Positions 4,301 to 56,000 are shown, numbered from the stretch's first letter. The stretch: DNA of 64,000 nucleotides from Podarcis liolepis (GCA_965112155.1 OZ218103.1), one strand, 5' to 3'. Notes: generated by a model from the letters alone, not told the origin. Made by a program: numbers and translations.

Positions 4301-4588
4301 CAATGAACACTGAGTATAAGACTGGTATTGGTTCTTATTGTAACCCACAGAGCAAATTATGAGAGTTCCATATAGCTAGGTGAAGACAGCCATAGAGCAG
4401 TAAAATATTTGTCTGAGCAAGAGTTTTTCTTGCTACAAATACTGTAGCAAGTGGAGCCTAAGTTCTGCACTTGGAATATATTGTGCGAACAAATCGAACT
4501 GATTGTTTTTGCATAATGCTGGTTCTGTCAGCCAAGGAGCTCTACAGAGCACTGAAGCTCCACTCTAACCAGAACTCCAGTCCAGTCT

Positions 4589-4713
4589 CAAATAGGTAGC
4601 CGTGTTGGTCTGCCATAGTCAAAATAAAAAAAATTCTTCCAGTAGCACCTTAAAGACCAACTAAGTTAGTTCTTGGTATGAGCTTTCGTGTGCATGCACA
4701 CTTCTTCAGATAC
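4589..4713 (-). mobile_element. Penelope-like element terminal (pLTR) fragment in a ROR1 intron
   Basis: Flanked by the 15-bp direct repeat ACTCCAGTCCAGTCT (4574-4588 and 4714-4728); near-identical to the element at 51041-51400; contains a hammerhead motif. Confidence 0.85.
4676..4713 (-). ncRNA. Minimal type I hammerhead ribozyme motif, copy 1 (antisense to ROR1)
   Basis: Minus strand reads GUAU-CUGAAGA-A-GUGUGC(AU)GCACAC-GAAA-GCUC-AUAC: core boxes CUGANGA and GAAA, stem II, palindromic AGCU stem III, NUH site CUC, stem I GUAU/AUAC. Confidence 0.8.
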
Positions 4714-4766
4714 ACTCCAGTCCAGTCTGTTTAGGCTTTCTAAGATGTTGCCAGATATACTGCCCA

Positions 4767-5136: not shown

Positions 5137-5179
5137 TGAGATTAAGAGCCTCATGCTGTACCGACTGAGCTATCCCGGC
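5137..5179 (-). mobile_element. tRNA-Lys(CTT)-derived SINE head fragment (5' half only)
   Basis: Minus strand GCCGGGATAGCTCAGTCGGTACAGCATGAGGCTCTTAATCTCA resembles the 5' half of tRNA-Lys-CTT; T arm and B box are absent. Confidence 0.7.
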
Positions 5180-5973
5180 AGCTAATGTTCATGTGCTGAT
5201 GCAGCAAGCACATGAAATACAGAGGCTTTCATACAAAATACAAAATCCAGTAGCATGCACAGTGCTCAGCATTGATAGCCATAGCCTATTTGTCTTATCC
5301 TCGTGTTGAGTTGTAGCCAACTAAATTATACTCATTAGAATTCTACCCGTTAAAATGGATGAACCTGTGTTATGTCCATTAACTTCAATAGATCTACTCT
5401 GAGTAGAGATAGCATTGAATACACCCGTTGTACAGATTTCTTTATCCTAAGTTTGGGAGGCTAGCCATTCTCCAAGGGAAACCAGCATAGCTCCATCAAA
5501 CAAAAAAGCAAATTCTAGGTGTTTCTTGCCATTTTCATAATGTGAGCTTATGAGCTGTAGTTCATGTTCAAATATGATGTAAGAAAGCTGCCAGGAAAGA
5601 TCCAAGCAGTGTTATCAATGCTGCTCCATAACTGGTAACAGCTGCTGTTGATCTGACAGCAGCTACCATAGTTTTGTGCCTCCATGCAGAGCTGGAAAGG
5701 AAACCACTTCTGGAAAGGATGTGATTACTGCAAAACATTAATATGCAAAGAAGGAGGTTATTTTCAGAGGGCTAGATTTGGCCCGTTCTCACTACCAGCA
5801 CTGGGTTTGTTATCTAGAATTGTTGGCTGTATGGCTACAGAGTGGCGAGGGCTGTTTGTATTTACCTGGACAGCCTACTCGTCTGTATGACCAAGAGCTT
5901 ATCCAAAATATTTTTATATACTAAACATGCAGCCAGAATTGTGAATTCAAGGCAATATCCTGAAAACAGTTAC

Positions 5974-18655: not shown

Positions 18656-20080
18656 AGCAAAGCCAAAGAGCTGCCTCTATCTGCTGTCCGTTTTATGGAA
18701 GAGTTGGGTGAATGTGCCTTTGGCAAAATCTACAAGGGACACCTTTATCTACCAGGCATGGATCATGCTCAGCTGGTTGCAATTAAGACCCTAAAGGACT
18801 GCAACAATCCACAACAGTGGGCAGAGTTCCAGCAGGAAGCCTCTCTGATGGCAGAACTACATCATCCCAACATCGTTTGCCTTCTTGGCGTTGTGACTCA
18901 GGAGCAGCCAGTCTGCATGCTTTTTGAGTACATGAATCAAGGGGACCTGCATGAATTTCTTATAATGCGATCACCACATTCAGATGTTGGGTGCAGCAGT
19001 GATGAGGATGGTACTGTAAAATCTAGCTTAGATCATGGAGATTTTCTGCACATAGCAGTCCAGATTGCAGCAGGGATGGAATACTTATCAAGTCATTTTT
19101 TTGTTCACAAGGATCTGGCTGCTCGAAATATTTTAATTGGAGAACAGCTCCACGTGAAGATTTCTGATTTGGGACTGTCAAGAGAAATCTACTCTGCAGA
19201 TTATTTCAGAGTTCAAAACAAGTCCCTCTTACCCATTCGTTGGATGCCCCCAGAGGCAATTCTGTATGGCAAATTCTCTTCCGATTCAGACATCTGGTCC
19301 TTTGGTGTTGTCCTGTGGGAGATTTTCAGCTTTGGTCTTCAGCCCTATTATGGATTTAGTAACCAAGAGGTCATAGAAATGGTTAGGAAGCGACAACTTT
19401 TGCCATGCTCTGAAGACTGCCCTCCCAGAATGTACAGCTTGATGACCGAATGTTGGCATGAGCTGCCATCTCGGAGACCAAGGTTTAAAGATATCCATGC
19501 CAGGCTGCGTTCTTGGGAGGGGCTGTCAAGTCACACTAGTTCTACTACTCCTTCTGGTGGAAATGCTACCACTCAGACAACTTCTCTCAGTGCAAGCCCA
19601 GTTAGCAACATGAGTAACCCTAGGTACCCTAACTACATGTTTCCAGCACAGGGTATACCACAAGGCCAAATTGCTGGATTTATTGGCCCACCAATACCTC
19701 AAAACCAGCGATTTATTCCTATAAATGGATATCCAATTCCTCCTGGATATGCTGCTTTCCCAGCTGCTCACTACCAGCCTGCAGGCCCACCCAGAGTAAT
19801 TCAGCACTGTCCTCCACCAAAGAGTCGTTCGCCAAGTAGTGCAAGTGGATCAACCAGCACCGGGCATGTGACTAGCTTACCCTCTTCAGGATCTAATCAG
19901 GATGCAAATATTCCTTTGCTGTCTCATATGTCTATGCAGAGTCATCCAAGTGGGATTAGTATAACCGTTTTTGGAAACAAAACTCAAAAACCCTACAAAA
20001 TTGACTCCAAACAGACATCTCTATTAGGAGACTCCAGTATTCATGGACATAATGAGACCGTGATTTCAGCAGAGATGTAA
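18656..20080 (+). CDS. ROR1: ROR1 last coding exon (human exon 9 equivalent): tyrosine pseudokinase domain, Ser/Thr-rich and Pro-rich tail, stop TAA
   Basis: Acceptor aacag ends 18655; reads [13 protein letters not shown] into the 461-aa ORF at 18695. Motifs [34 protein letters not shown], and the ROR1-type tail ([33 protein letters not shown]). Confidence 0.99.
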
Positions 20081-31493: not shown

Positions 31494-33101
31494 GTAGCCA
31501 TACTGTTTCCTATAAATGTTGTGTTGCACTGTGATATTGCACTGCCAAAACAATTACGAATGCAATGTTTTTAATGTGCCGTTACTACTGCTTGCCAAAT
31601 ATATAACCCTTTACATATAAATGCTTTGCAGTCTCTATTGTGTTCTCTCTTCAATTACCTTGCAATATATTGAGGGATTATATTATATTGCCCAGTCAGT
31701 CTGGAAGTGGAACTTGAATCAATGTCTTCCAGATCTCAGTCCAATACCTTAACAGTAGCATTTCAAGAATAATTTTACTCCTTTCACTCTTTACAATCCA
31801 ATAAAATATCTATTCCTGTTGTAAATATTTGTCTGATTTTAACACCAATGAACAATTCACACTGGGTTGTGAATACAGTGTATAGCTTTATTATGTCATG
31901 TAGTGCTTCTCAACACAGATTTGAAGCATATATGAGTGTCATTAGGTGTGTAGACAGTCCTTAACTACATGAACAGTGGCAGTGGATTCACTACAGTTAG
32001 GTAACATAGGAATATAGGAAGCTGCCTTAGATTCAGTTGGAGTATTGGTCCCATGTAGCTCAGTATTATCTGCGTTGACTGCTAGTAGCTCTCCAGGTTT
32101 CAGACAAGGGACACTCCCAGCACTATCCAGAGACTTTCCCATTACATGGAATGAAGCCCACACGCTTGGTGCAAGTATATATGTGGTATATATGTGAAAA
32201 TAACTGCTCCTGTGCTTTCATATATTGCATCGTGAGTTCAGTCTTAATTTTTCTAAAACTTTGAAGTAATAGGTCACCTCACTGAAATATTTTGTGATGT
32301 AGAAAAAGATTGAAAGAAGAAAAAAACAAGATTTCAGTAACCTTTTGAAATGACTGCACATGTATTGATAGCATTGCAAATTTTCAAAAACAGATGTTTT
32401 GCAACTATGAAATATCACATCATAGGCATTAATATGTCTATATCTTTATGTAATGAGTGGAATAGCATATAAATTTTAAACACAATGAAGTCGAGCTCAT
32501 TGCTCTATTATTTACTAATTCAGAGGTGGCCATCCGTACAGCTACCAACCCCAACCTGATGCGGTCTAGTTGTTTGGGTCTGCAGCTGCCATAGTCTTTC
32601 ACCATTGGCCATGCTGGTTGTGGCAGAAGAGAGTGGTATATCTGATAGGCACCAGGTTAGAGAAGGCTATCTTAGAGATATAAAGGTGACACTGTATGCA
32701 TCTCTCTAAATCCCCTGATGCACCTTAGGCTCCTTCTGCCCGTTCTCTTTCTGTTCCTGCCATCTGCTTTCCTCTCACACATTTGACGTCCTGTTCACCA
32801 CAGCAGGAGAGGGAAGGAGTGGGCAACAAGACCAGGAAGAGAGTGGGTGGGAGGAGCTGCAGCTGCCTTATCTCCCATTGCTGCATTAGATTAAAAGGTT
32901 TGCATCCGGTGTCTGCATTGCAAAGTAGCAACCCTAGCTATAAATATTTCTAAAAGTATGTCAATATAAAGCTACAGTCTGTGCAAGCTTACATGCAAGT
33001 TAGGCATATTGATGACAGCAGGACTTATTTCCAACTAAATGCATGCAATTTGGGGCTACACGTGCACTTAGATGTTCTGATTTATTTATTTTTTGTACCA
33101 G

Positions 33102-33194
33102 GAGCTGAACTCCAACTATCATTAAGGTACACTGAAGAGTACAACAGAGTCCCTCCAAGCGTCACTTTCAACACTATTCCATTCCATCCCAATG
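33102..33194 (+). CDS. UBE2U: UBE2U coding exon 3: (G)AELQLSLRYTEEYNRVPPSVTFNTIPFHPN(V)
   Basis: Acceptor cag ends 33101, donor gtaagg at 33195; 93 bp; E2 PPxVxF...FHPN signature. Confidence 0.96.
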
Positions 33195-49571: not shown

Positions 49572-50783
49572 GTACTTCTCAGACTCCAAGATTTTTGTTT
49601 TTTACTTTCTTTGAAGCGACATATGTGTAGGTGGAAGAAATAGCCAACTTTCCCTGAAGTAATTGGGATTGTTGCTTGTGAACTTAGAGCTAAACTGATT
49701 TTATAATATACTATATAAAAATATAGCCATCTCTTTTCACTGTTGGAGATCATGTCATTTAGATGAATGAAAAGGTGTGTAGGTGTTACACACTTCCTTC
49801 TTTGTGAAGAGCATTTGGGGGGGGGTCCTATTAGGACTAGGACAAAATCCTCCTATTTTGCACCAAACTACTGCTGCACAAACATGGAGAATGCCATTCC
49901 AATTCCTTTCTGGATTGCACCAGGAACCTCAAATGAAGACCTTCTAGGTGTGGCTTAATGCTTGGAGGGCTCATAGCCTGGCTTGGAACAGTACGCCATC
50001 ACAGAGAAGATTGATCTGACAGATTGAAGATATTTCCCAAAACTTAATGATCCATCCCTGACAAATGCTTATCAGTCTTCCCTGTAACACCTCCAGAGGA
50101 TGATTTCACATTCTCCCTAGGCAATCAGGTCTATGGCCCAGAAATGCAAGACAGGATTCTTTCCATAATATGCGGCTTAAATCATTGTTGCCACGCTGCC
50201 TCTTGTCCTTGCATGAGTGGCAAAGGTGAACCTCAATCTTCCCTGTGAGTACATTTTCAACATATGGAAAATGTTACTGTACTCTCCTTTAATCATATCT
50301 TCTGTAGCATAAAGATATCTGGTTTCCTCTTTTGTACTATCTGCATGGTGGGCAGATTTCTATAAAATGTGTTAACTTTTTCTGTAAAACCCAACATGTA
50401 AACATTTTGAGCATACACTCTACCTGATGGACTTTTCCATAAACAAAACAAATTTTATACCTAAAACAATAAATATTAACCCAAATCAAAGGTCCTACCA
50501 TCTTAAGCCATATTTCCAGACACAAATAATTATATGCATATTATTTCTCAAAATGATCATAAAAAGTCACTTCAAAGTAACTACCCTACTCCTAATATAC
50601 TAAAACACCATTTGAGTTCTTTGAAATATAAGAAAAATTATCTAGCACATATGTTAATATAGTATACCACTTTTTAAAATTTTAAAAAACCACAAATGTT
50701 GTGCTCCAATTTAGTTACAGTTTTACACACACACAAAATCATTTATTCTCTTGTTTCCTTTTGCATAATTCCTACTATGAAAG

Positions 50784-50911
50784 CATCTGGATCCCAGAGT
50801 ACTTCTGGAAGAGTGTCTAAGAACAGGAGCCAGGATGAGGAGCAATGGGAGAAGGAAGCGGAAGATCTAGTAATGTGGTCTGCAAGTCTTGAGCACATGA
50901 AATTGGATTAA
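50784..50911 (+). CDS. UBE2U: UBE2U last coding exon: (A)SGSQSTSGRVSKNRSQDEEQWEKEAEDLVMWSASLEHMKLD*
   Basis: First AG after a long pyrimidine tract ends 50783; EAEDLVMWSASL matches recalled human EVEDLISWTNTL; TAA at 50909-50911. Summed CDS is 933 nt = 310 aa plus stop. Confidence 0.88.
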
Positions 50912-51078
50912 ACTACGATCACTAATGTAATCAAGGTTGAGAGCAATATTGTTGTTGCAATGGGATCAAATGTCCAGCCATTCACCAGACCCCCCTACTC
51001 TGTACAGTTTAATATGAGGGAGATCATCTGCATATTAACTTCCAGTAGCACCTTAAAGACCAACTAAGTTAGTTCTTG

Positions 51079-51116
51079 GTATGAGCTTTCGTGTGCATGC
51101 ACACTTCTTCAGATAC
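51079..51116 (-). ncRNA. Minimal hammerhead ribozyme motif, copy 2
   Basis: 38 nt identical to copy 1. Confidence 0.8.
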
Positions 51117-51305
51117 ACTGAAACAGAAGTTGCCAGATCCTTCTATATAGTGAGAAGGTGGGGAGGGGTATTACTCAGAAGGGTGGTGGGAATGGGAGAT
51201 TGGCAGATAGCTGAGATGAGCCTGTTGACGACTCTTAATAATAGGTCTTACAGGAAAAGGCAAGGGGTGAGAAGGTGAGAAATGGCTTAGTCATGTATAA
51301 TGAGT

Positions 51306-51343
51306 GTATCTGAAGAAGTGTGCATGCACACGAAAGCTCATAC
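51306..51343 (+). ncRNA. Minimal hammerhead ribozyme motif, copy 3 (sense to UBE2U); predicted cleavage between 51339 and 51340
   Basis: GTAT 51306-09, CTGAAGA 51310-16, extra A 51317, stem II GTGTGCATGCACAC 51318-31, GAAA 51332-35, GCTC 51336-39, ATAC 51340-43. Confidence 0.8.
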
Positions 51344-52203
51344 CAAGAACTAACTTTTTTATTTTGACTATGGCAGACCAACACGGCTACCTATCTGTAA
51401 CTGCATATTAACTGTGCAGTTTAATAAGTGGGTGGCACGTTCTCATAGTCAAGGGTCCTCTGCCTGAATCACAGCCCCCAAAGTTCTGTATTATGAGGCT
51501 GTGAATACTGATAAATTGACGAGCAGAGATTGATGGTGGGTCACATAAGCCTTGGTTGGGTTTTTTCTTAAGTGTTTCATTATAGATAAAGACTACAAAT
51601 GAAGTGCGCACACTTTAGCACCAATGTGGTGCTGTTGTTGTTGTTGTGATTTATTTTAATACCTGGGCATATAACTATGTGCAGGATGCTTGATGAAGTG
51701 AAGACAGAGAAAGGGGAGGCAAATGAATGCGGAGATAGAAAGGGGAAGAGCATGGGATTGTTTCAATTGCACGAACTTAAGCTTAGTTAGAATGGAGTAT
51801 GCTGACTAGGGGGATGTTCCAAAGACTTAAAAGTTTGGAGGAACCTAGAACCTCCGGCTTTGAGTACATTAGTCAGTTTTCATCTTCTGCAATCTTTTGC
51901 TCCATAGGTGATAAAACATGTAGCACCTGGTCACTTGTAGCAAACTTCCAACAATACCTTCCAGCCCCTGTGACTCCAGCAAAATCCCTATATTTGATAT
52001 CAAGTTGTTGGGTTTTACTGACCTGAAGTCAACTTTGGTGTAAAGCAGTCTAAAATCATGTCAGCCATAGGTCCAGCCTTATTATTTTTATAATATCATC
52101 CATATAAAAATCAACATATATATTAGTGAGCATAAATGAAAGGAGTATTAGCTCACTGTATATGTGAGAATATATGTCTTTAAGCAGAGGCTTGACAACT
52201 ATA

Positions 52204-53047: not shown

Positions 53048-56000
53048 TTATGATACAACATGCCTGGTGCAACATGCCTTTGGGAGTGACAGGCACTGAT
53101 CACTAGGGGGCCCACTGAATTTTGCTTCTCGCCTCTGGTTCCTAGGGATATGCATATACCACTTCTTCCTCATCTCCTTTCTAGTGAGAGAGAAATGAGT
53201 CAGGTTACTCACAGGCAGTTCTGGCCACCCTTGTCTTTCCTGTACGCAGCAGGAATGGCCATGATTGGACATACATGGTCATAACATCCCCACCCAGTGA
53301 CTTGGGTGGTGGAAAGCTTTCCAGCGCTGCTCCCTTCCTATGGGCAGCTATCCTTTGGCAACAACACAGTCTGTCTCTCACCATGTGCTTGTGCAGTGCC
53401 TAATTTGGGTGGGCTGTGATCTCAGCCAGGATTACCAGAAACTACAGCCCTATAAATACATTATATTTTGAGAATAACAGCTTGCTAGGGCCTCTGGTCA
53501 TCAAAGTGCTTTGTCCGATGCAAGGCCTGTTTACTGAGTGCATCTTGTGCTGCGATAATTACCTTGAAGTACAGGGCTGATAGTTCCAAATTTAAAAGAT
53601 AGTATTATCACAGATTTCTCAATCCAAAGTACTAGAGACATTGGGAGTTCTTAATCAAAAATAGGCTTTAAGCAAATGATCATTAACTCTGTGAGCAGAA
53701 CCAGGCTTTTCCGTTCTGTGCATTTTTATAGGCACTATTTTACTGCAGGCCTTTTTTATGAGTTCTGGGATCGTGAGGCTTAAAGAGGGGACACAGCCAG
53801 GATTTGGACGTGGGAGGAACAAAGTGTCAAGCTGAGCAGGGCTCCACATGCACATCTGGGACCATTTAGAGCATATTCTTTGTGTGTGTGGTGTGGTGTT
53901 TTTTTAAGTGCTCCAACCGATTATAGGCAAGTAGCAGCTCTGCCGAATGAAACCCAGCAATGTGAATGTGAGAAGAGTAAGTCAGTTGAGCTTACCTGAC
54001 ACTCCTGGATACTGTGACTAGCCTCAGCATGGGGACGAACAAACGTGGTGAAGCATGCTGGTATTTTGCCAATTTCAGCATTCTCATACTCTCCAGTCGA
54101 TGAAGTTTCATGCCGTAACTTTAACAGCCTGTTCCTAAAAAGAGACATCTGCACAGAATCACACCATAAGCGATTCACACTGGATCAGTTATATTGATTG
54201 GTGTGCTGTTCAGTTTTGACTGCAATGTTTTGTATGTGAAGAGGAGGGGTGCTATATTGGCAGGTACTATTTAAATGGGGAAATGCCCGCAAATTCACTG
54301 CTTTGCAGCAGCTGGCTCTGACAGTGCTGCTGCTACATTAAAGGAAATGGAGACCATGAGCTGCACCACCACATTTCTGCGACCCATAGAGCAACCTCCC
54401 TCCCTCCTATGTGAACTTGTAGGAGCAGGCACCTTAGCCTGCCCTCCTAAACCCGGCACACTAAAGCATACGTAATTCTGCTTCTCATGCTTAAAAAGAA
54501 ATGGTGGTTTTAAGTTTCACCATTACTTGGAGAATAGACACCCATACCTTAGAATAGAGCCCCATAAAATGATCATGTAAAAAACCAAAATTGGTGTGTA
54601 GTTGGGTGCAATACTATTTATGGATAAAGAATATGAAGAAATCCCTTCATGAAGGAAACCAGTGTAAATGCACTGATATCACTTATGGGCTTATATCTTT
54701 TGCAGTGAGAACTGGATTGCAGTGTAGTGTTCTTCAGCTCAATGTCCTCTAGAAGGCACTATATCACTGTGAAATTCACAGTTTTTTTATTCCTCTTAGG
54801 AAATAAGCCATTTGTAATTGCTTGATTTGAAGCCAGTTATCATCGTTTTCCTGCTCTTAATTATAAAAGTTTTTTTTTAATCATTTTAACACAATACAGT
54901 GCATCTTTTCGTGGGAAAGGATGTTTTGTTCAGTATGATGGAATTTACAAGTGAAGGACTGTCTCAAAATGTTTTTTTAAAAAAACCAAAAATACATCTA
55001 AAGAATATTGTTAAGTGTTGAATCCTGTGAAGAATTATGGCATCTAAACTTGGTATTTGAAAAGTTATTTACATAATGTCTTTATTAAATAAAATATTTT
55101 TAAAAGCATATACATAATAGGAGAAACACTCTGGAAGTTGCAAGAGAAATAAACAGGGTACCCAGGGGTGAAACTAGGCTTTATTTCACCCAGGTGAAAA
55201 AACCCAATCTGGCACCCACATGTGCATTTGTGTACATACACACATAGGCTGGGAGGCTTCACCTGGGGCAAAAAATCCTGGCCAGCCCCCCCGCCCATAG
55301 CTACGAAGGTACCACAGTGATCAGGACTGTATGAAATCACTGAATGACATACATTGGAGTCAGGTCAATATCAAGTGATCTAATTTACACTCTGCTTTGG
55401 AACATGTTTTTTTAAAGAGCCTGGCTAGCTTTTCAGATACTTTTTAATTCAATGACTTTCTAAAGAAATGCCTGAAGTAACTGATATTATAGTTTGAAAT
55501 CTTGTTTATTCTGTTATATTTTACTCCAAGAAGACCCATTTATCCTAAATAGCACCCAATAAGGCAGACATGTATGTATAAATTTTTTTTTTTTAAATGT
55601 GATCCCATTGAGATCCCAAGGTCTCAATTGCAGGTAGCTCTTAGAAATGTTAAATAATCAATAAAAAGTTTTTGACTTTTTAAACTCATATTAATTTTTT
55701 TAATCACTTGTACTTAAATACTAAAAAAATTGTAACTTAAAGTAAGTCCATCATGTGACATAGCACATTAAAGCCCATTAAGTTCTGAAGAGATTGGTGT
55801 TTTTAGTTTTGACATCTCTCAATTGGATGACATAAGGTAAAAAAGTTGGATCACTTGATATGGAATGACCCAGTACTGCTGTAACAGGGAACTGCAATAA
55901 CATTGAAATACACGTGTCTTGTTAACATTATTCACAGAAAAAGGCATTTAGTGTTAAATCTTAGTGGCTCCATTCCCCACTCTTTTAAATGCAGTCCTGA

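What the first reader, a model, noticed from the sequence alone, without database searches (positions are those of the whole stretch)
51028..51413. Sense hammerhead ribozyme and its perfect antisense copy just downstream of the UBE2U stop codon
Seen: a 360-bp insertion with a 13-bp TSD lies 130 bp after the UBE2U stop. It holds a complete minimal hammerhead motif on the gene's strand (51306-51343, predicted cut after C51339). An exact reverse complement lies upstream: 51066-51119 and 51303-51356 form a perfect 54-bp inverted repeat with a 183-nt loop. Known: Penelope-like elements carry minimal type I hammerheads in their pLTRs and often insert with an inverted 5' copy; such hammerheads have a tiny palindromic stem III and are thought to cleave as dimers. 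Inference: a UBE2U transcript crossing this region has two exclusive folds, a long dsRNA hairpin (ribozyme sequestered; possible ADAR or Dicer substrate) or a folded ribozyme. The ribozyme could cut the 3' UTR or the downstream pre-mRNA. This would be an accidental RNA switch on a gene that is testis-biased in mammals.
Basis: partly seen in the sequence, partly recalled or inferred. Interest (0 to 1): 0.8.

Follow-up and report, generated by a model that had tools for sequence, protein, structure and literature searches.

The report
Routine Penelope-type hammerhead insertion after UBE2U
A young 360-bp fragment of a very abundant lizard jumping gene (Penelope-like), carrying a small hammerhead-ribozyme motif and a mirror-image copy of it, sits 129 bp after the UBE2U stop codon; it is a textbook insertion product of this transposon class, and it should fold into a long double-stranded hairpin rather than act as a self-cutting RNA switch.

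Summary
A 13-bp target-site duplication (TSD) flanks a 360-bp insertion starting 129 nt after the TAA of the last UBE2U coding exon. It has a perfect 54-bp inverted repeat with a 183-nt spacer and a complete minimal type-I hammerhead (HHR) on the gene strand (51306-51343, C17 = 51339).

The Penelope-like element (PLE) reading also holds. The motif has every hallmark published for metazoan PLE min-HHRs. The inverted 5' copy is a described PLE insertion form. The family's 3' end lies about 113-118 nt after the start of helix II in an AC-rich stretch, as for Anolis Poseidon_Ac reverse-transcription start sites. A second copy lies at 4589-4716 (-). K-mer depth suggests roughly 10^4 copies.

Reads add two points. 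A relative about 4% divergent has the empty site, and its RNA-like contigs run from the spliced last exon across that site. A relative about 1% divergent has the insertion.

The "RNA switch" is not supported. In context the hammerhead helices have pair probabilities of 1e-19 to 1e-41, against about 1.0 for the hairpin. Only one sense copy is present, and such motifs are reported inactive as monomers. Rfam models give no hit.

This scan has flagged many similar copies elsewhere in this genome. Verdict: ordinary, low interest.

The parts
50784..50911 (+). Last coding exon of UBE2U (AG acceptor at 50782-83; stop TAA at 50909-50911)
   Evidence: The ORF frame ends at 50911. An RNA-like contig of run X17 carries 741 nt of other sequence and then aligns from 50782 to 50928, which is a spliced pattern; the intron at 50500-50754 has zero depth. 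UBE2U identity comes from the exon at 33101-33193. The choice of frame is inferred.
50907..50912 (+). Proximal poly(A) hexamer ATTAAA overlapping the stop codon
   Evidence: The X17 spliced contig ends at 50928, 16 nt after the hexamer, at a k-1 (30-nt) overlap with the next contig. That suggests a graph branch, possibly a proximal poly(A) site (inference).
51028..51040 (.). Left target-site duplication CTGCATATTAACT
   Evidence: family D4. It contains ATT, the cleavage preference reported for the Anolis PLE endonuclease.
51041..51119 (-). Inverted, 5'- and 3'-truncated copy of the HHR module; the hammerhead reads on the minus strand at 51079-51116
   Evidence: 100% identical over 79 nt to copy 2 at 4638-4716. 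The min-HHR descriptor hits it on the minus strand.
51120..51302 (+). 183-nt spacer: element body upstream of the hammerhead (pLTR-like, non-coding)
   Evidence: Its k-mer depth in DNA run X1 is as high as that of the arms (about 4e5-8e5 against 22 for single-copy flanks), so it belongs to the same repeat family.
51303..51356 (+). Sense arm of the inverted repeat, holding the minimal type-I hammerhead at 51306-51343 (predicted cut after C51339)
51357..51400 (+). 3' tail ending in the AC-rich stretch CAGACCAACACGGCTACC. Between 51356 and 51357 this copy lacks 33 nt that copy 2 and the inverted arm have.
   Evidence: Family RNA reads show the canonical undeleted form (joint 51039/51355 and loose ends at 51355).
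51401..51413 (.). Right target-site duplication
4589..4716 (-). Second copy of the same family: about 125 nt, starting at the hammerhead and ending in the canonical tail, flanked by a 12-15-bp TSD (4574-4588 / 4714-4728)

Best explanation
This is one young, lineage-specific, single-event 'fold-back' insertion of a non-coding derivative of a Penelope-like retroelement (Poseidon-type 3' module). The inserted unit consists of an inverted, truncated copy of the hammerhead module, 183 nt of element body, the sense hammerhead module, and the tail.

It was made by PLE target-primed reverse transcription. That process starts internally in an AC-rich site about 113-118 nt downstream of helix II, can prime from both cleaved target strands, and so often leaves an inverted 5' copy and a TSD.

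It landed in DNA that, at least in a close relative, is transcribed as a long 3' UTR or read-through of UBE2U. In such a transcript the two arms would pair into a perfect 54-bp (or longer) hairpin. The hammerhead, although intact in sequence, would be sequestered and has no sense partner for the dimer it needs.

The most likely outcome is no ribozyme cleavage. Any effect would be of the generic kind expected from double-stranded RNA in a 3' UTR. Shown here: anatomy, family membership, presence or absence in relatives, and thermodynamics. Inferred: the insertion mechanism, transcription across the insertion in this species, and the lack of cleavage.
For: - **Anatomy.**
- **Not chance.** The motif is far above chance and is carried by a repeat family.
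- **Min-HHR hallmarks.** All hallmarks listed by Cervera and de la Pena 2014 are present. That paper also reports dual min-HHRs 100-700 bp apart on opposite strands.
- **Insertion form.** An inverted 5'-truncated copy and a tail are described as typical PLE insertion structures.
- **Anolis Poseidon_Ac.** It cleaves and extends both target strands, prefers ATT, and starts reverse transcription 111-118 nt into the ORF, which begins at helix II. In copy 2 the 3' end is 113 nt from G10.1, and in this copy about 116 nt in canonical coordinates. Both ends follow a CAACAC motif like the one at 111-118 of Poseidon_Ac.
- **Non-coding.** All three frames after the hammerhead hit stops within about 20 codons (read).
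- **Abundance.** Family k-mer depth is about 2e4-5e4 times single-copy depth.
- **Relatives.** The empty site appears in run X17 (contig joining 51027 to 51401, about 4% divergent). The insertion is present in run X1 (contigs run 25 and 21 nt into it, about 1% divergent).
- **Youth.** Arms and TSDs are 100% identical.
- **Folding.**
Against: - No RNA from an animal carrying the insertion could be examined, so transcription across it, editing, and cleavage are all untested here.
- Folding numbers are equilibrium values for naked RNA. Co-transcriptional folding, helicases or the PLE protein (which assists the Anolis ribozyme) could change the picture.
- The link between this non-coding family and an autonomous RT/GIY-YIG element rests on architecture and earlier unchecked scan notes, not on a full-length copy examined here.
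- Its helix II and tail differ in sequence from Poseidon_Ac.
- Family-wide covariation could not be tested: the three copies in the window are identical in the motif.
Confidence: 0.85

Rival explanations
1. One reading: the UBE2U 3' UTR toggles between a hairpin and an active hammerhead that cleaves the 3' UTR or downstream pre-mRNA at C51339, making an accidental riboswitch-like control.
For: The core is intact and in sense orientation. In a relative, transcripts appear to cross the site. The local helix II hairpin can form as soon as it is transcribed (probability 0.98 in isolation). The Anolis PLE hammerhead does cleave when its protein is present.
Against: In context, helix I has pair probability about 1e-40 and helix II about 1e-19, against about 1.0 for the inverted repeat. 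The antisense arm is transcribed first. There is only one sense copy, so no cis dimer can form. Helix III is a 4-nt palindrome, and single motifs showed no detectable cleavage in vitro. In Anolis RNA-seq no reads begin or end at the HHR site. The dimeric HHR fold is 24 kcal/mol worse than the best alternative dimer.
Confidence: 0.04
2. The insertion matters through its double-stranded RNA, not the ribozyme. The perfect 54-bp hairpin in the long UBE2U 3'-UTR isoform would be edited by ADAR, retained in the nucleus or diced, or would shift poly(A) choice toward the proximal ATTAAA. This would resemble inverted Alu pairs in human 3' UTRs.
For: The perfect duplex scores about -99 kcal/mol, and the whole insertion has z = -8.9 against shuffles. 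RNA-like coverage crosses the empty site in a relative. The next canonical poly(A) hexamer after 50907 is at 54337, so a long isoform would contain the hairpin.
Against: No RNA data exist from carriers. A proximal site at about 50928 may already terminate part of the transcripts. The two bulk RNA runs laid show UBE2U nearly silent, so the tissue context is unknown. Effects of this kind are generic and often small.
Confidence: 0.2
3. Two independent insertions (one minus-strand copy, one plus-strand copy) lie side by side, rather than one fold-back event.
For: The family is extremely abundant, and PLEs tend to insert into or next to existing copies.
Against: A single TSD pair flanks the whole unit, with no internal TSD. 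The inverted arm lacks the family's 3' end, so it is not a normal 3'-anchored insertion. The empty-site contig removes exactly 51028-51400. The arms are 100% identical.
Confidence: 0.05
4. The hammerhead-like motif is a chance resemblance in a repeat and not a ribozyme relic.
For: No Rfam hammerhead model matches, even at E<=10. Isolated folding is unremarkable (z = -0.72). No covariation data are available.
Against: The descriptor expectation is 0.01 per window. The motif shows features not needed for a chance match but typical of PLE HHRs: a bulged nucleotide after A9, G10.1-C11.1, and palindromic 15.2/16.2. Its position relative to the element's 3' end equals that in Poseidon_Ac. In family reads, variants reaching 10% fall on the bulge, loop II, a G-U-preserving site and helix I, and none on core positions (a weak test because reads were filtered at 95% likeness).
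Confidence: 0.03

Closest known systems
Minimal type-I hammerheads of metazoan Penelope-like elements (Cervera and de la Pena 2014, PMC4209133; dimer cleavage per Lunse et al. 2017, cited in PMC6765202)
   Same: It has the catalytic boxes, an unpaired nucleotide between A9 and G10.1, and a G10.1-C11.1 pair. Helix I is short (4 bp), helix III is absent apart from a palindromic AGCU, and the element has a TSD-flanked truncated context. A second copy lies on the opposite strand, within the reported 100-700 bp range.
   Different: Helix II is a 14-nt perfect palindrome that folds as 5 bp plus a tetraloop, slightly shorter than the typical 6-8 bp. Activity is untested. Family covariation was not examined here.
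Poseidon_Ac (PAc) of Anolis carolinensis (Frangieh et al. 2024, PMC11167929)
   Same: The hammerhead architecture is the same. The distance from helix II to the insertion's 3' end is the same (about 111-118 nt, in an AC-rich CAACAC-type site). The target is AT-rich with ATT. The inverted copy is consistent with both-strand priming.
   Different: Helix II and tail sequences differ. There is no ORF after the hammerhead (stops in all frames), so this is a non-autonomous or degenerate family. The start codon of PAc sits at helix II, whereas here only a dead ATG lies in loop II.
Non-LTR retrozymes of animals (Cervera and de la Pena 2020, PMC7229834; Li et al. 2026 preprint, 10.64898/2026.07.22.740005)
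   Same: It is a non-coding, PLE-related element with a type-I hammerhead. The preprint notes that exon-overlapping copies sit mostly in 3' UTRs.
   Different: Retrozymes are head-to-tail tandem repeats that give circular RNAs. Here there is one sense copy plus one inverted copy, with no tandem.
Inverted-repeat SINE pairs (IRAlus) forming dsRNA in 3' UTRs (my own knowledge: Chen, DeCerbo and Carmichael 2008)
   Same: It is a long intramolecular duplex made by two inverted copies of a retroelement in a 3' UTR region.
   Different: It was made in one insertion event. The arms are short (54 bp perfect) against about 300 bp for Alus. No editing or retention data exist.
Hammerheads embedded in host mRNAs or introns (Clec2 3'-UTR discontinuous HHR; intronic HH9/HH10; cited in PMC4209133)
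   Same: It is a sense-strand hammerhead inside a host transcription unit.
   Different: Those have stable helices and tertiary contacts, are conserved across species, and match Rfam models. This one is a young, lineage-specific repeat copy with no helix III and no Rfam hit.

Membership tests
PLE minimal type-I hammerhead (min-HHR) | Conserved core: CUGANGA, GAAA, U16.1-H17 | tested here: met
   CUGAAGA at 51310-16, GAAA at 51332-35, UC at 51338-39
PLE minimal type-I hammerhead (min-HHR) | Unpaired nucleotide between A9 and 10.1, and a G10.1-C11.1 pair | tested here: met
   A51317 is unpaired; G51318 pairs with C51331.
PLE minimal type-I hammerhead (min-HHR) | No real helix III; palindromic 15.2/16.2 that allows a dimer | tested here: met
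   AGCU at 51335-38
PLE minimal type-I hammerhead (min-HHR) | Short helix I (4-5 bp) and long helix II (6-8 bp) | tested here: inconclusive
   Helix I, GUAU/AUAC, is 4 bp and meets the criterion. Helix II is 5 bp plus a CAUG loop as a hairpin; it is a 14-nt palindrome.
PLE minimal type-I hammerhead (min-HHR) | Compensatory changes across family copies | tested here: inconclusive
   The three window copies are identical. Read pile-ups show only C11.1>U (G-U kept) and loop, bulge and helix I variants. Metagenome scans found no further copies.
PLE minimal type-I hammerhead (min-HHR) | Self-cleavage as a dimer | not testable with these tools
   In silico the double-hammerhead fold scores -12.7 kcal/mol against -36.6 for the best dimer.
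Rfam hammerhead families (Hammerhead_1, _3, _II, HH9, HH10) | Covariance-model score at or above the gathering threshold | tested here: not met
   No hammerhead match, even at E<=10 on 4 kb and on 401 nt
Penelope-like element insertion | TSD-flanked, 5'-truncated copy with an adjacent inverted 5'-truncated copy | tested here: met
   described as typical
Penelope-like element insertion | 3' end at an internal AC-rich RT start site about 111-118 nt from the ORF/helix II start; AT-rich (ATT) target | tested here: met
   The 3' ends lie at +113 (copy 2) and about +116 (this copy) from G10.1, after CAACAC. The TSD contains ATT.
Penelope-like element insertion | RT plus GIY-YIG ORF (autonomous element) | tested here: not met
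   Stops occur in all frames right after the hammerhead. The window has no ORF of 150 aa or more with such domains. This copy is therefore a non-coding derivative or fragment. The link to an autonomous partner was not tested.
Non-LTR retrozyme | Head-to-tail tandem repeats, each with a sense hammerhead | tested here: not met
   There is one sense and one antisense copy and no tandem.
Functional host-mRNA hammerhead (Clec2-type) | Conservation at the orthologous site across species | tested here: not met
   The site is empty in a relative about 4% divergent (X17 contig joining 51027 to 51401).
3'-UTR inverted-repeat dsRNA (IRAlu-like) | Long intramolecular duplex within a transcribed 3' UTR, with editing or retention | tested here: inconclusive
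   The duplex is present. Transcription across the site is seen only in a relative lacking the insertion. Editing is not testable.

The most novel reading that the evidence does not exclude
In germ cells, the long UBE2U 3'-UTR isoform delivers a perfect hairpin of a roughly 10^4-copy Penelope-like family. That hairpin could be diced or edited, making a host-gene-borne trigger of small RNAs against the family. Alternatively, its hammerhead could be cut only where the PLE protein is expressed (protein-assisted ribozyme), coupling UBE2U mRNA fate to transposon activity.
Probability: 0.04. Interest if true: 0.6.

Novelty: new member of a known kind. Interest (0 to 1): 0.2.

Why it matters
As a single locus it matters little. 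PLE min-hammerheads occur by the thousands in non-mammalian vertebrate genomes, and opposite-strand pairs and 3'-UTR copies have already been described. Its one useful property is as a natural experiment. Close relatives differ in presence or absence of the insertion, at a site that appears to be transcribed with UBE2U. Comparing 3' ends, editing and expression between carriers and non-carriers would be a cheap in vivo test of whether such relic hammerheads or hairpins do anything to host mRNAs.

Tried and rejected
- **Rfam cmscan.** I ran it at E<=10 on 4 kb and on the 401-nt insertion. There was no hammerhead hit. I take this as expected for a motif without helix III, not as disproof.
- **Metagenome scans.** Two scans with degenerate and family-specific hammerhead patterns, meant to collect diverged copies for covariation, gave 0 hits.
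- **Supplement string search.** Short strings of this family were searched in the Poseidon_Ac supplement and gave 0 hits. This is uninformative because the GenBank file splits the sequence into blocks. I then read the file and compared by eye: the architecture is the same, the sequence differs.
- **Lunse et al. 2017.** The paper is not held, so I cite it only through PMC6765202.
- **ARAGORN.** It found nothing on the tRNA-like SINE head near copy 2.
- **Pfam on the last-exon peptide.** No family matched, so the reading frame of the last exon rests on the ORF and the spliced contig.
- **Spliced UBE2U model.** I did not build one.
- **Bulk RNA runs X23 and X24.** They come from the species lacking the insertion, and UBE2U is almost silent in them. 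They say nothing about cleavage or editing. Their reads on the insertion come from other family copies (91-93% run on into unlike sequence).

Full report
**1. Observation**

- **Repeats.** The repeat finder reports the 13-bp direct repeat CTGCATATTAACT at 51028-51040 and 51401-51413. It also reports a 54-nt, 100% complementary inverted repeat at 51066-51119 / 51303-51356 with 183 nt between the arms. The inserted block is 51041-51400 (360 bp).
- **Hammerhead on the + strand.** Helix I is GUAU (51306-09) / AUAC (51340-43). The core is CUGAAGA (51310-16). One unpaired A follows (51317). Helix II is GUGUG-CAUG-CACAC (51318-31). Then come GAAA (51332-35) and the palindrome AGCU (51335-38), with C17 at 51339.
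- **Chance.** A min-HHR descriptor I wrote finds three hits in the window, all from this repeat, against a mean of 0.01 in 200 dinucleotide-preserving shuffles. Pattern searches agree.
- **Rfam.** The covariance models give no hammerhead hit, even at E<=10 on the 401-nt insertion. These minimal motifs lack helix III, and Cervera and de la Pena needed a relaxed descriptor to find them.

**2. Gene context**

- An exon at 33101-33193 (+) has the solved UBE2U structure 1yrv as its best hit (E 1.8e-6; 'TIPFHPN' aligned).
- A 461-aa ORF at 18695-20080 (+) is a tyrosine-kinase domain (PF07714, 9e-95), consistent with ROR1 upstream of UBE2U.
- The ORF frame ending in TAA at 50909-50911 follows an AG acceptor at 50782-83. 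ATTAAA at 50907-12 overlaps the stop. The next canonical hexamer is at 54337.
- The insertion starts 129 nt after the stop.
- Exons were searched one by one.

**3. What the insertion is**

*Second copy and family form.* A second copy lies at 4589-4716 (-), about 125 nt long, with a 12-15-bp TSD of its own. It starts at the hammerhead and shows the canonical downstream sequence.

Compared with copy 2:
- The inverted arm of the UBE2U insertion (51041-51119) is 100% identical over 79 nt.
- The sense arm lacks 33 nt between 51356 and 51357.
- All three frames after the hammerhead close within about 20 codons, so the family is non-coding.

*Agreement with the literature.*
- Cervera and de la Pena 2014 list the non-trivial hallmarks of PLE min-HHRs: a nucleotide between A9 and 10.1, G10.1-C11.1, palindromic 15.2/16.2, short helix I and long helix II. 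They also mention pairs 100-700 bp apart on opposite strands, and motifs in reptiles.
- Craig et al. 2021 describe the inverted 5'-truncated copy and the 'tail' as typical PLE insertion structures.
- Frangieh et al. 2024 show that Anolis Poseidon_Ac cuts and extends both target strands and prefers ATT. It starts reverse transcription 111-118 nt into the ORF, which begins at helix II.

*Geometry.* Here the 3' end is 113 nt (copy 2) or about 116 nt (this copy, canonical coordinates) from G10.1. It lies just after a CAACAC motif like the one at 111-118 of the Poseidon_Ac sequence. The sequence itself is not Poseidon_Ac: helix II and the tail differ.

**4. Reads**

- **DNA-type contigs of organism A (X1).** They are about 1% divergent and run 25 nt and 21 nt into the insertion from either flank, so the insertion is present. 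The summed k-mer depth over the insertion is 4e5-1.2e6 against 22 on the flanks. The tool warns that this is no copy number, but it points to the order of 10^4 copies. Many family contigs join 51116 to 51306, which is head-to-head palindromes meeting exactly at the 5' edge of helix I.
- **Contigs of organism J (X17).** The run has 112 M letters.
  - One contig has 741 nt of other sequence and then aligns from 50782 to 50928, a spliced pattern. The intron at 50500-50754 has zero depth, so this run behaves as RNA.
  - A second contig overlaps the first by 30 nt. It covers 50899-51027 and continues directly at 51401-51604. That is an empty site missing exactly one TSD plus the insertion, at about 4% divergence.
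  - Coverage continues to 52000.
  - So in a relative, transcription continues from the last exon across the target site. A graph branch at 50928 is compatible with partial use of the proximal ATTAAA (inference).
- **Raw RNA runs of organism J (X23, X24).** They show almost no UBE2U reads. Their reads on the insertion come from other family copies.
- **Variants.** Variants reaching 10% inside the motif fall on the bulge (51317), loop II (51326), C11.1>U (51331, G-U kept) and helix I (51341). None fall on core positions. This is weak evidence because reads were filtered at 95% likeness.

**5. Mechanism and the 'switch'**

- The whole insertion folds at -149.7 kcal/mol (z = -8.9) as one long hairpin. 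The arm duplex alone is about -99 kcal/mol.

| Context | Helix I pair probability | Helix II pair probability | Inverted repeat | Competing pairing 51300-05 / 51336-41 |
|---|---|---|---|---|
| Whole insertion (51041-51400) | about 1e-40 | about 1e-19 | about 1.0 | about 1e-39 |
| Stop codon to 51450 | about 3e-34 | about 1e-19 | about 1.0 | about 2e-34 |
| Isolated 61 nt | 4% | 98% | not applicable | 83-93% |

- Two sense copies prefer an intermolecular helix II duplex (-36.6 kcal/mol) over the double hammerhead (-12.7).
- The transcript would hold one sense copy only, and the antisense arm is made first.
- Published data point the same way. Single min-HHRs showed no detectable cleavage, and dimers cleaved poorly. 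The Anolis motif cleaves only with its protein, and no RNA-seq ends map to its site.
- I therefore rate ribozyme cleavage of UBE2U RNA as very unlikely. If the insertion has any effect, a generic double-stranded-RNA effect on the long isoform is the more plausible one. That remains untested.

**6. Comparison and novelty**

This is a member of a known kind: a PLE-derived, hammerhead-bearing fold-back insertion. The Li et al. 2026 preprint already notes that exon-overlapping PLE-related hammerhead repeats lie mostly in 3' UTRs.

Earlier notes of this scan list more than 100 hammerhead/Penelope observations in this same genome. Follow-ups there called similar cases ordinary. I used them as leads only.

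The locus has modest value as a natural presence/absence experiment for testing effects of relic hammerheads or hairpins on a host mRNA.

Noticed in passing
window 51116|51306 (family contigs of run X1) and copy 2 at 4713-4716: Many family contigs join two inverted copies exactly at the 5' edge of hammerhead helix I (GATAC|GTATC; 9 contigs). Copy 2 also begins there. This looks like a preferred 5' end of the mini-element at the ribozyme boundary. It is not the predicted cleavage site and is unexplained.
   Followed up: partly
window 51356/51357: The sense arm lacks 33 nt (AGTTGG...GAATTTT) that the inverted arm of the same insertion, copy 2 and most expressed family copies retain. So the two arms of one insertion differ by an internal deletion, perhaps from a template jump during insertion.
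   Followed up: partly
window 51000-51020 and 51412-51432: The target site carries a small 21-nt direct repeat of its own (86% identity). It sits just outside the TSDs and is unrelated to the insertion.
   Followed up: no
window 18695-20080 (+): A 461-aa open exon encodes a tyrosine-kinase domain (PF07714, 9e-95). This is probably the last exon of ROR1, upstream of UBE2U on the same strand (conserved synteny).
   Followed up: partly
window ~5150-5190 (-): A tRNA-like sequence (GCCGGGATAGCTCAGTCGGTA...) lies next to copy 2. It is probably the head of a tRNA-derived SINE. ARAGORN does not call it.
   Followed up: partly
window 51178 and 51238 (RNA runs X23/X24): In organism J, 70-101 RNA reads per run leave the family sequence at 51178 into one shared flank. 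In X23 alone, 12 of 21 reads carry a 6-nt insertion after 51238. This suggests that one or a few particular family copies are the expressed ones.
   Followed up: no
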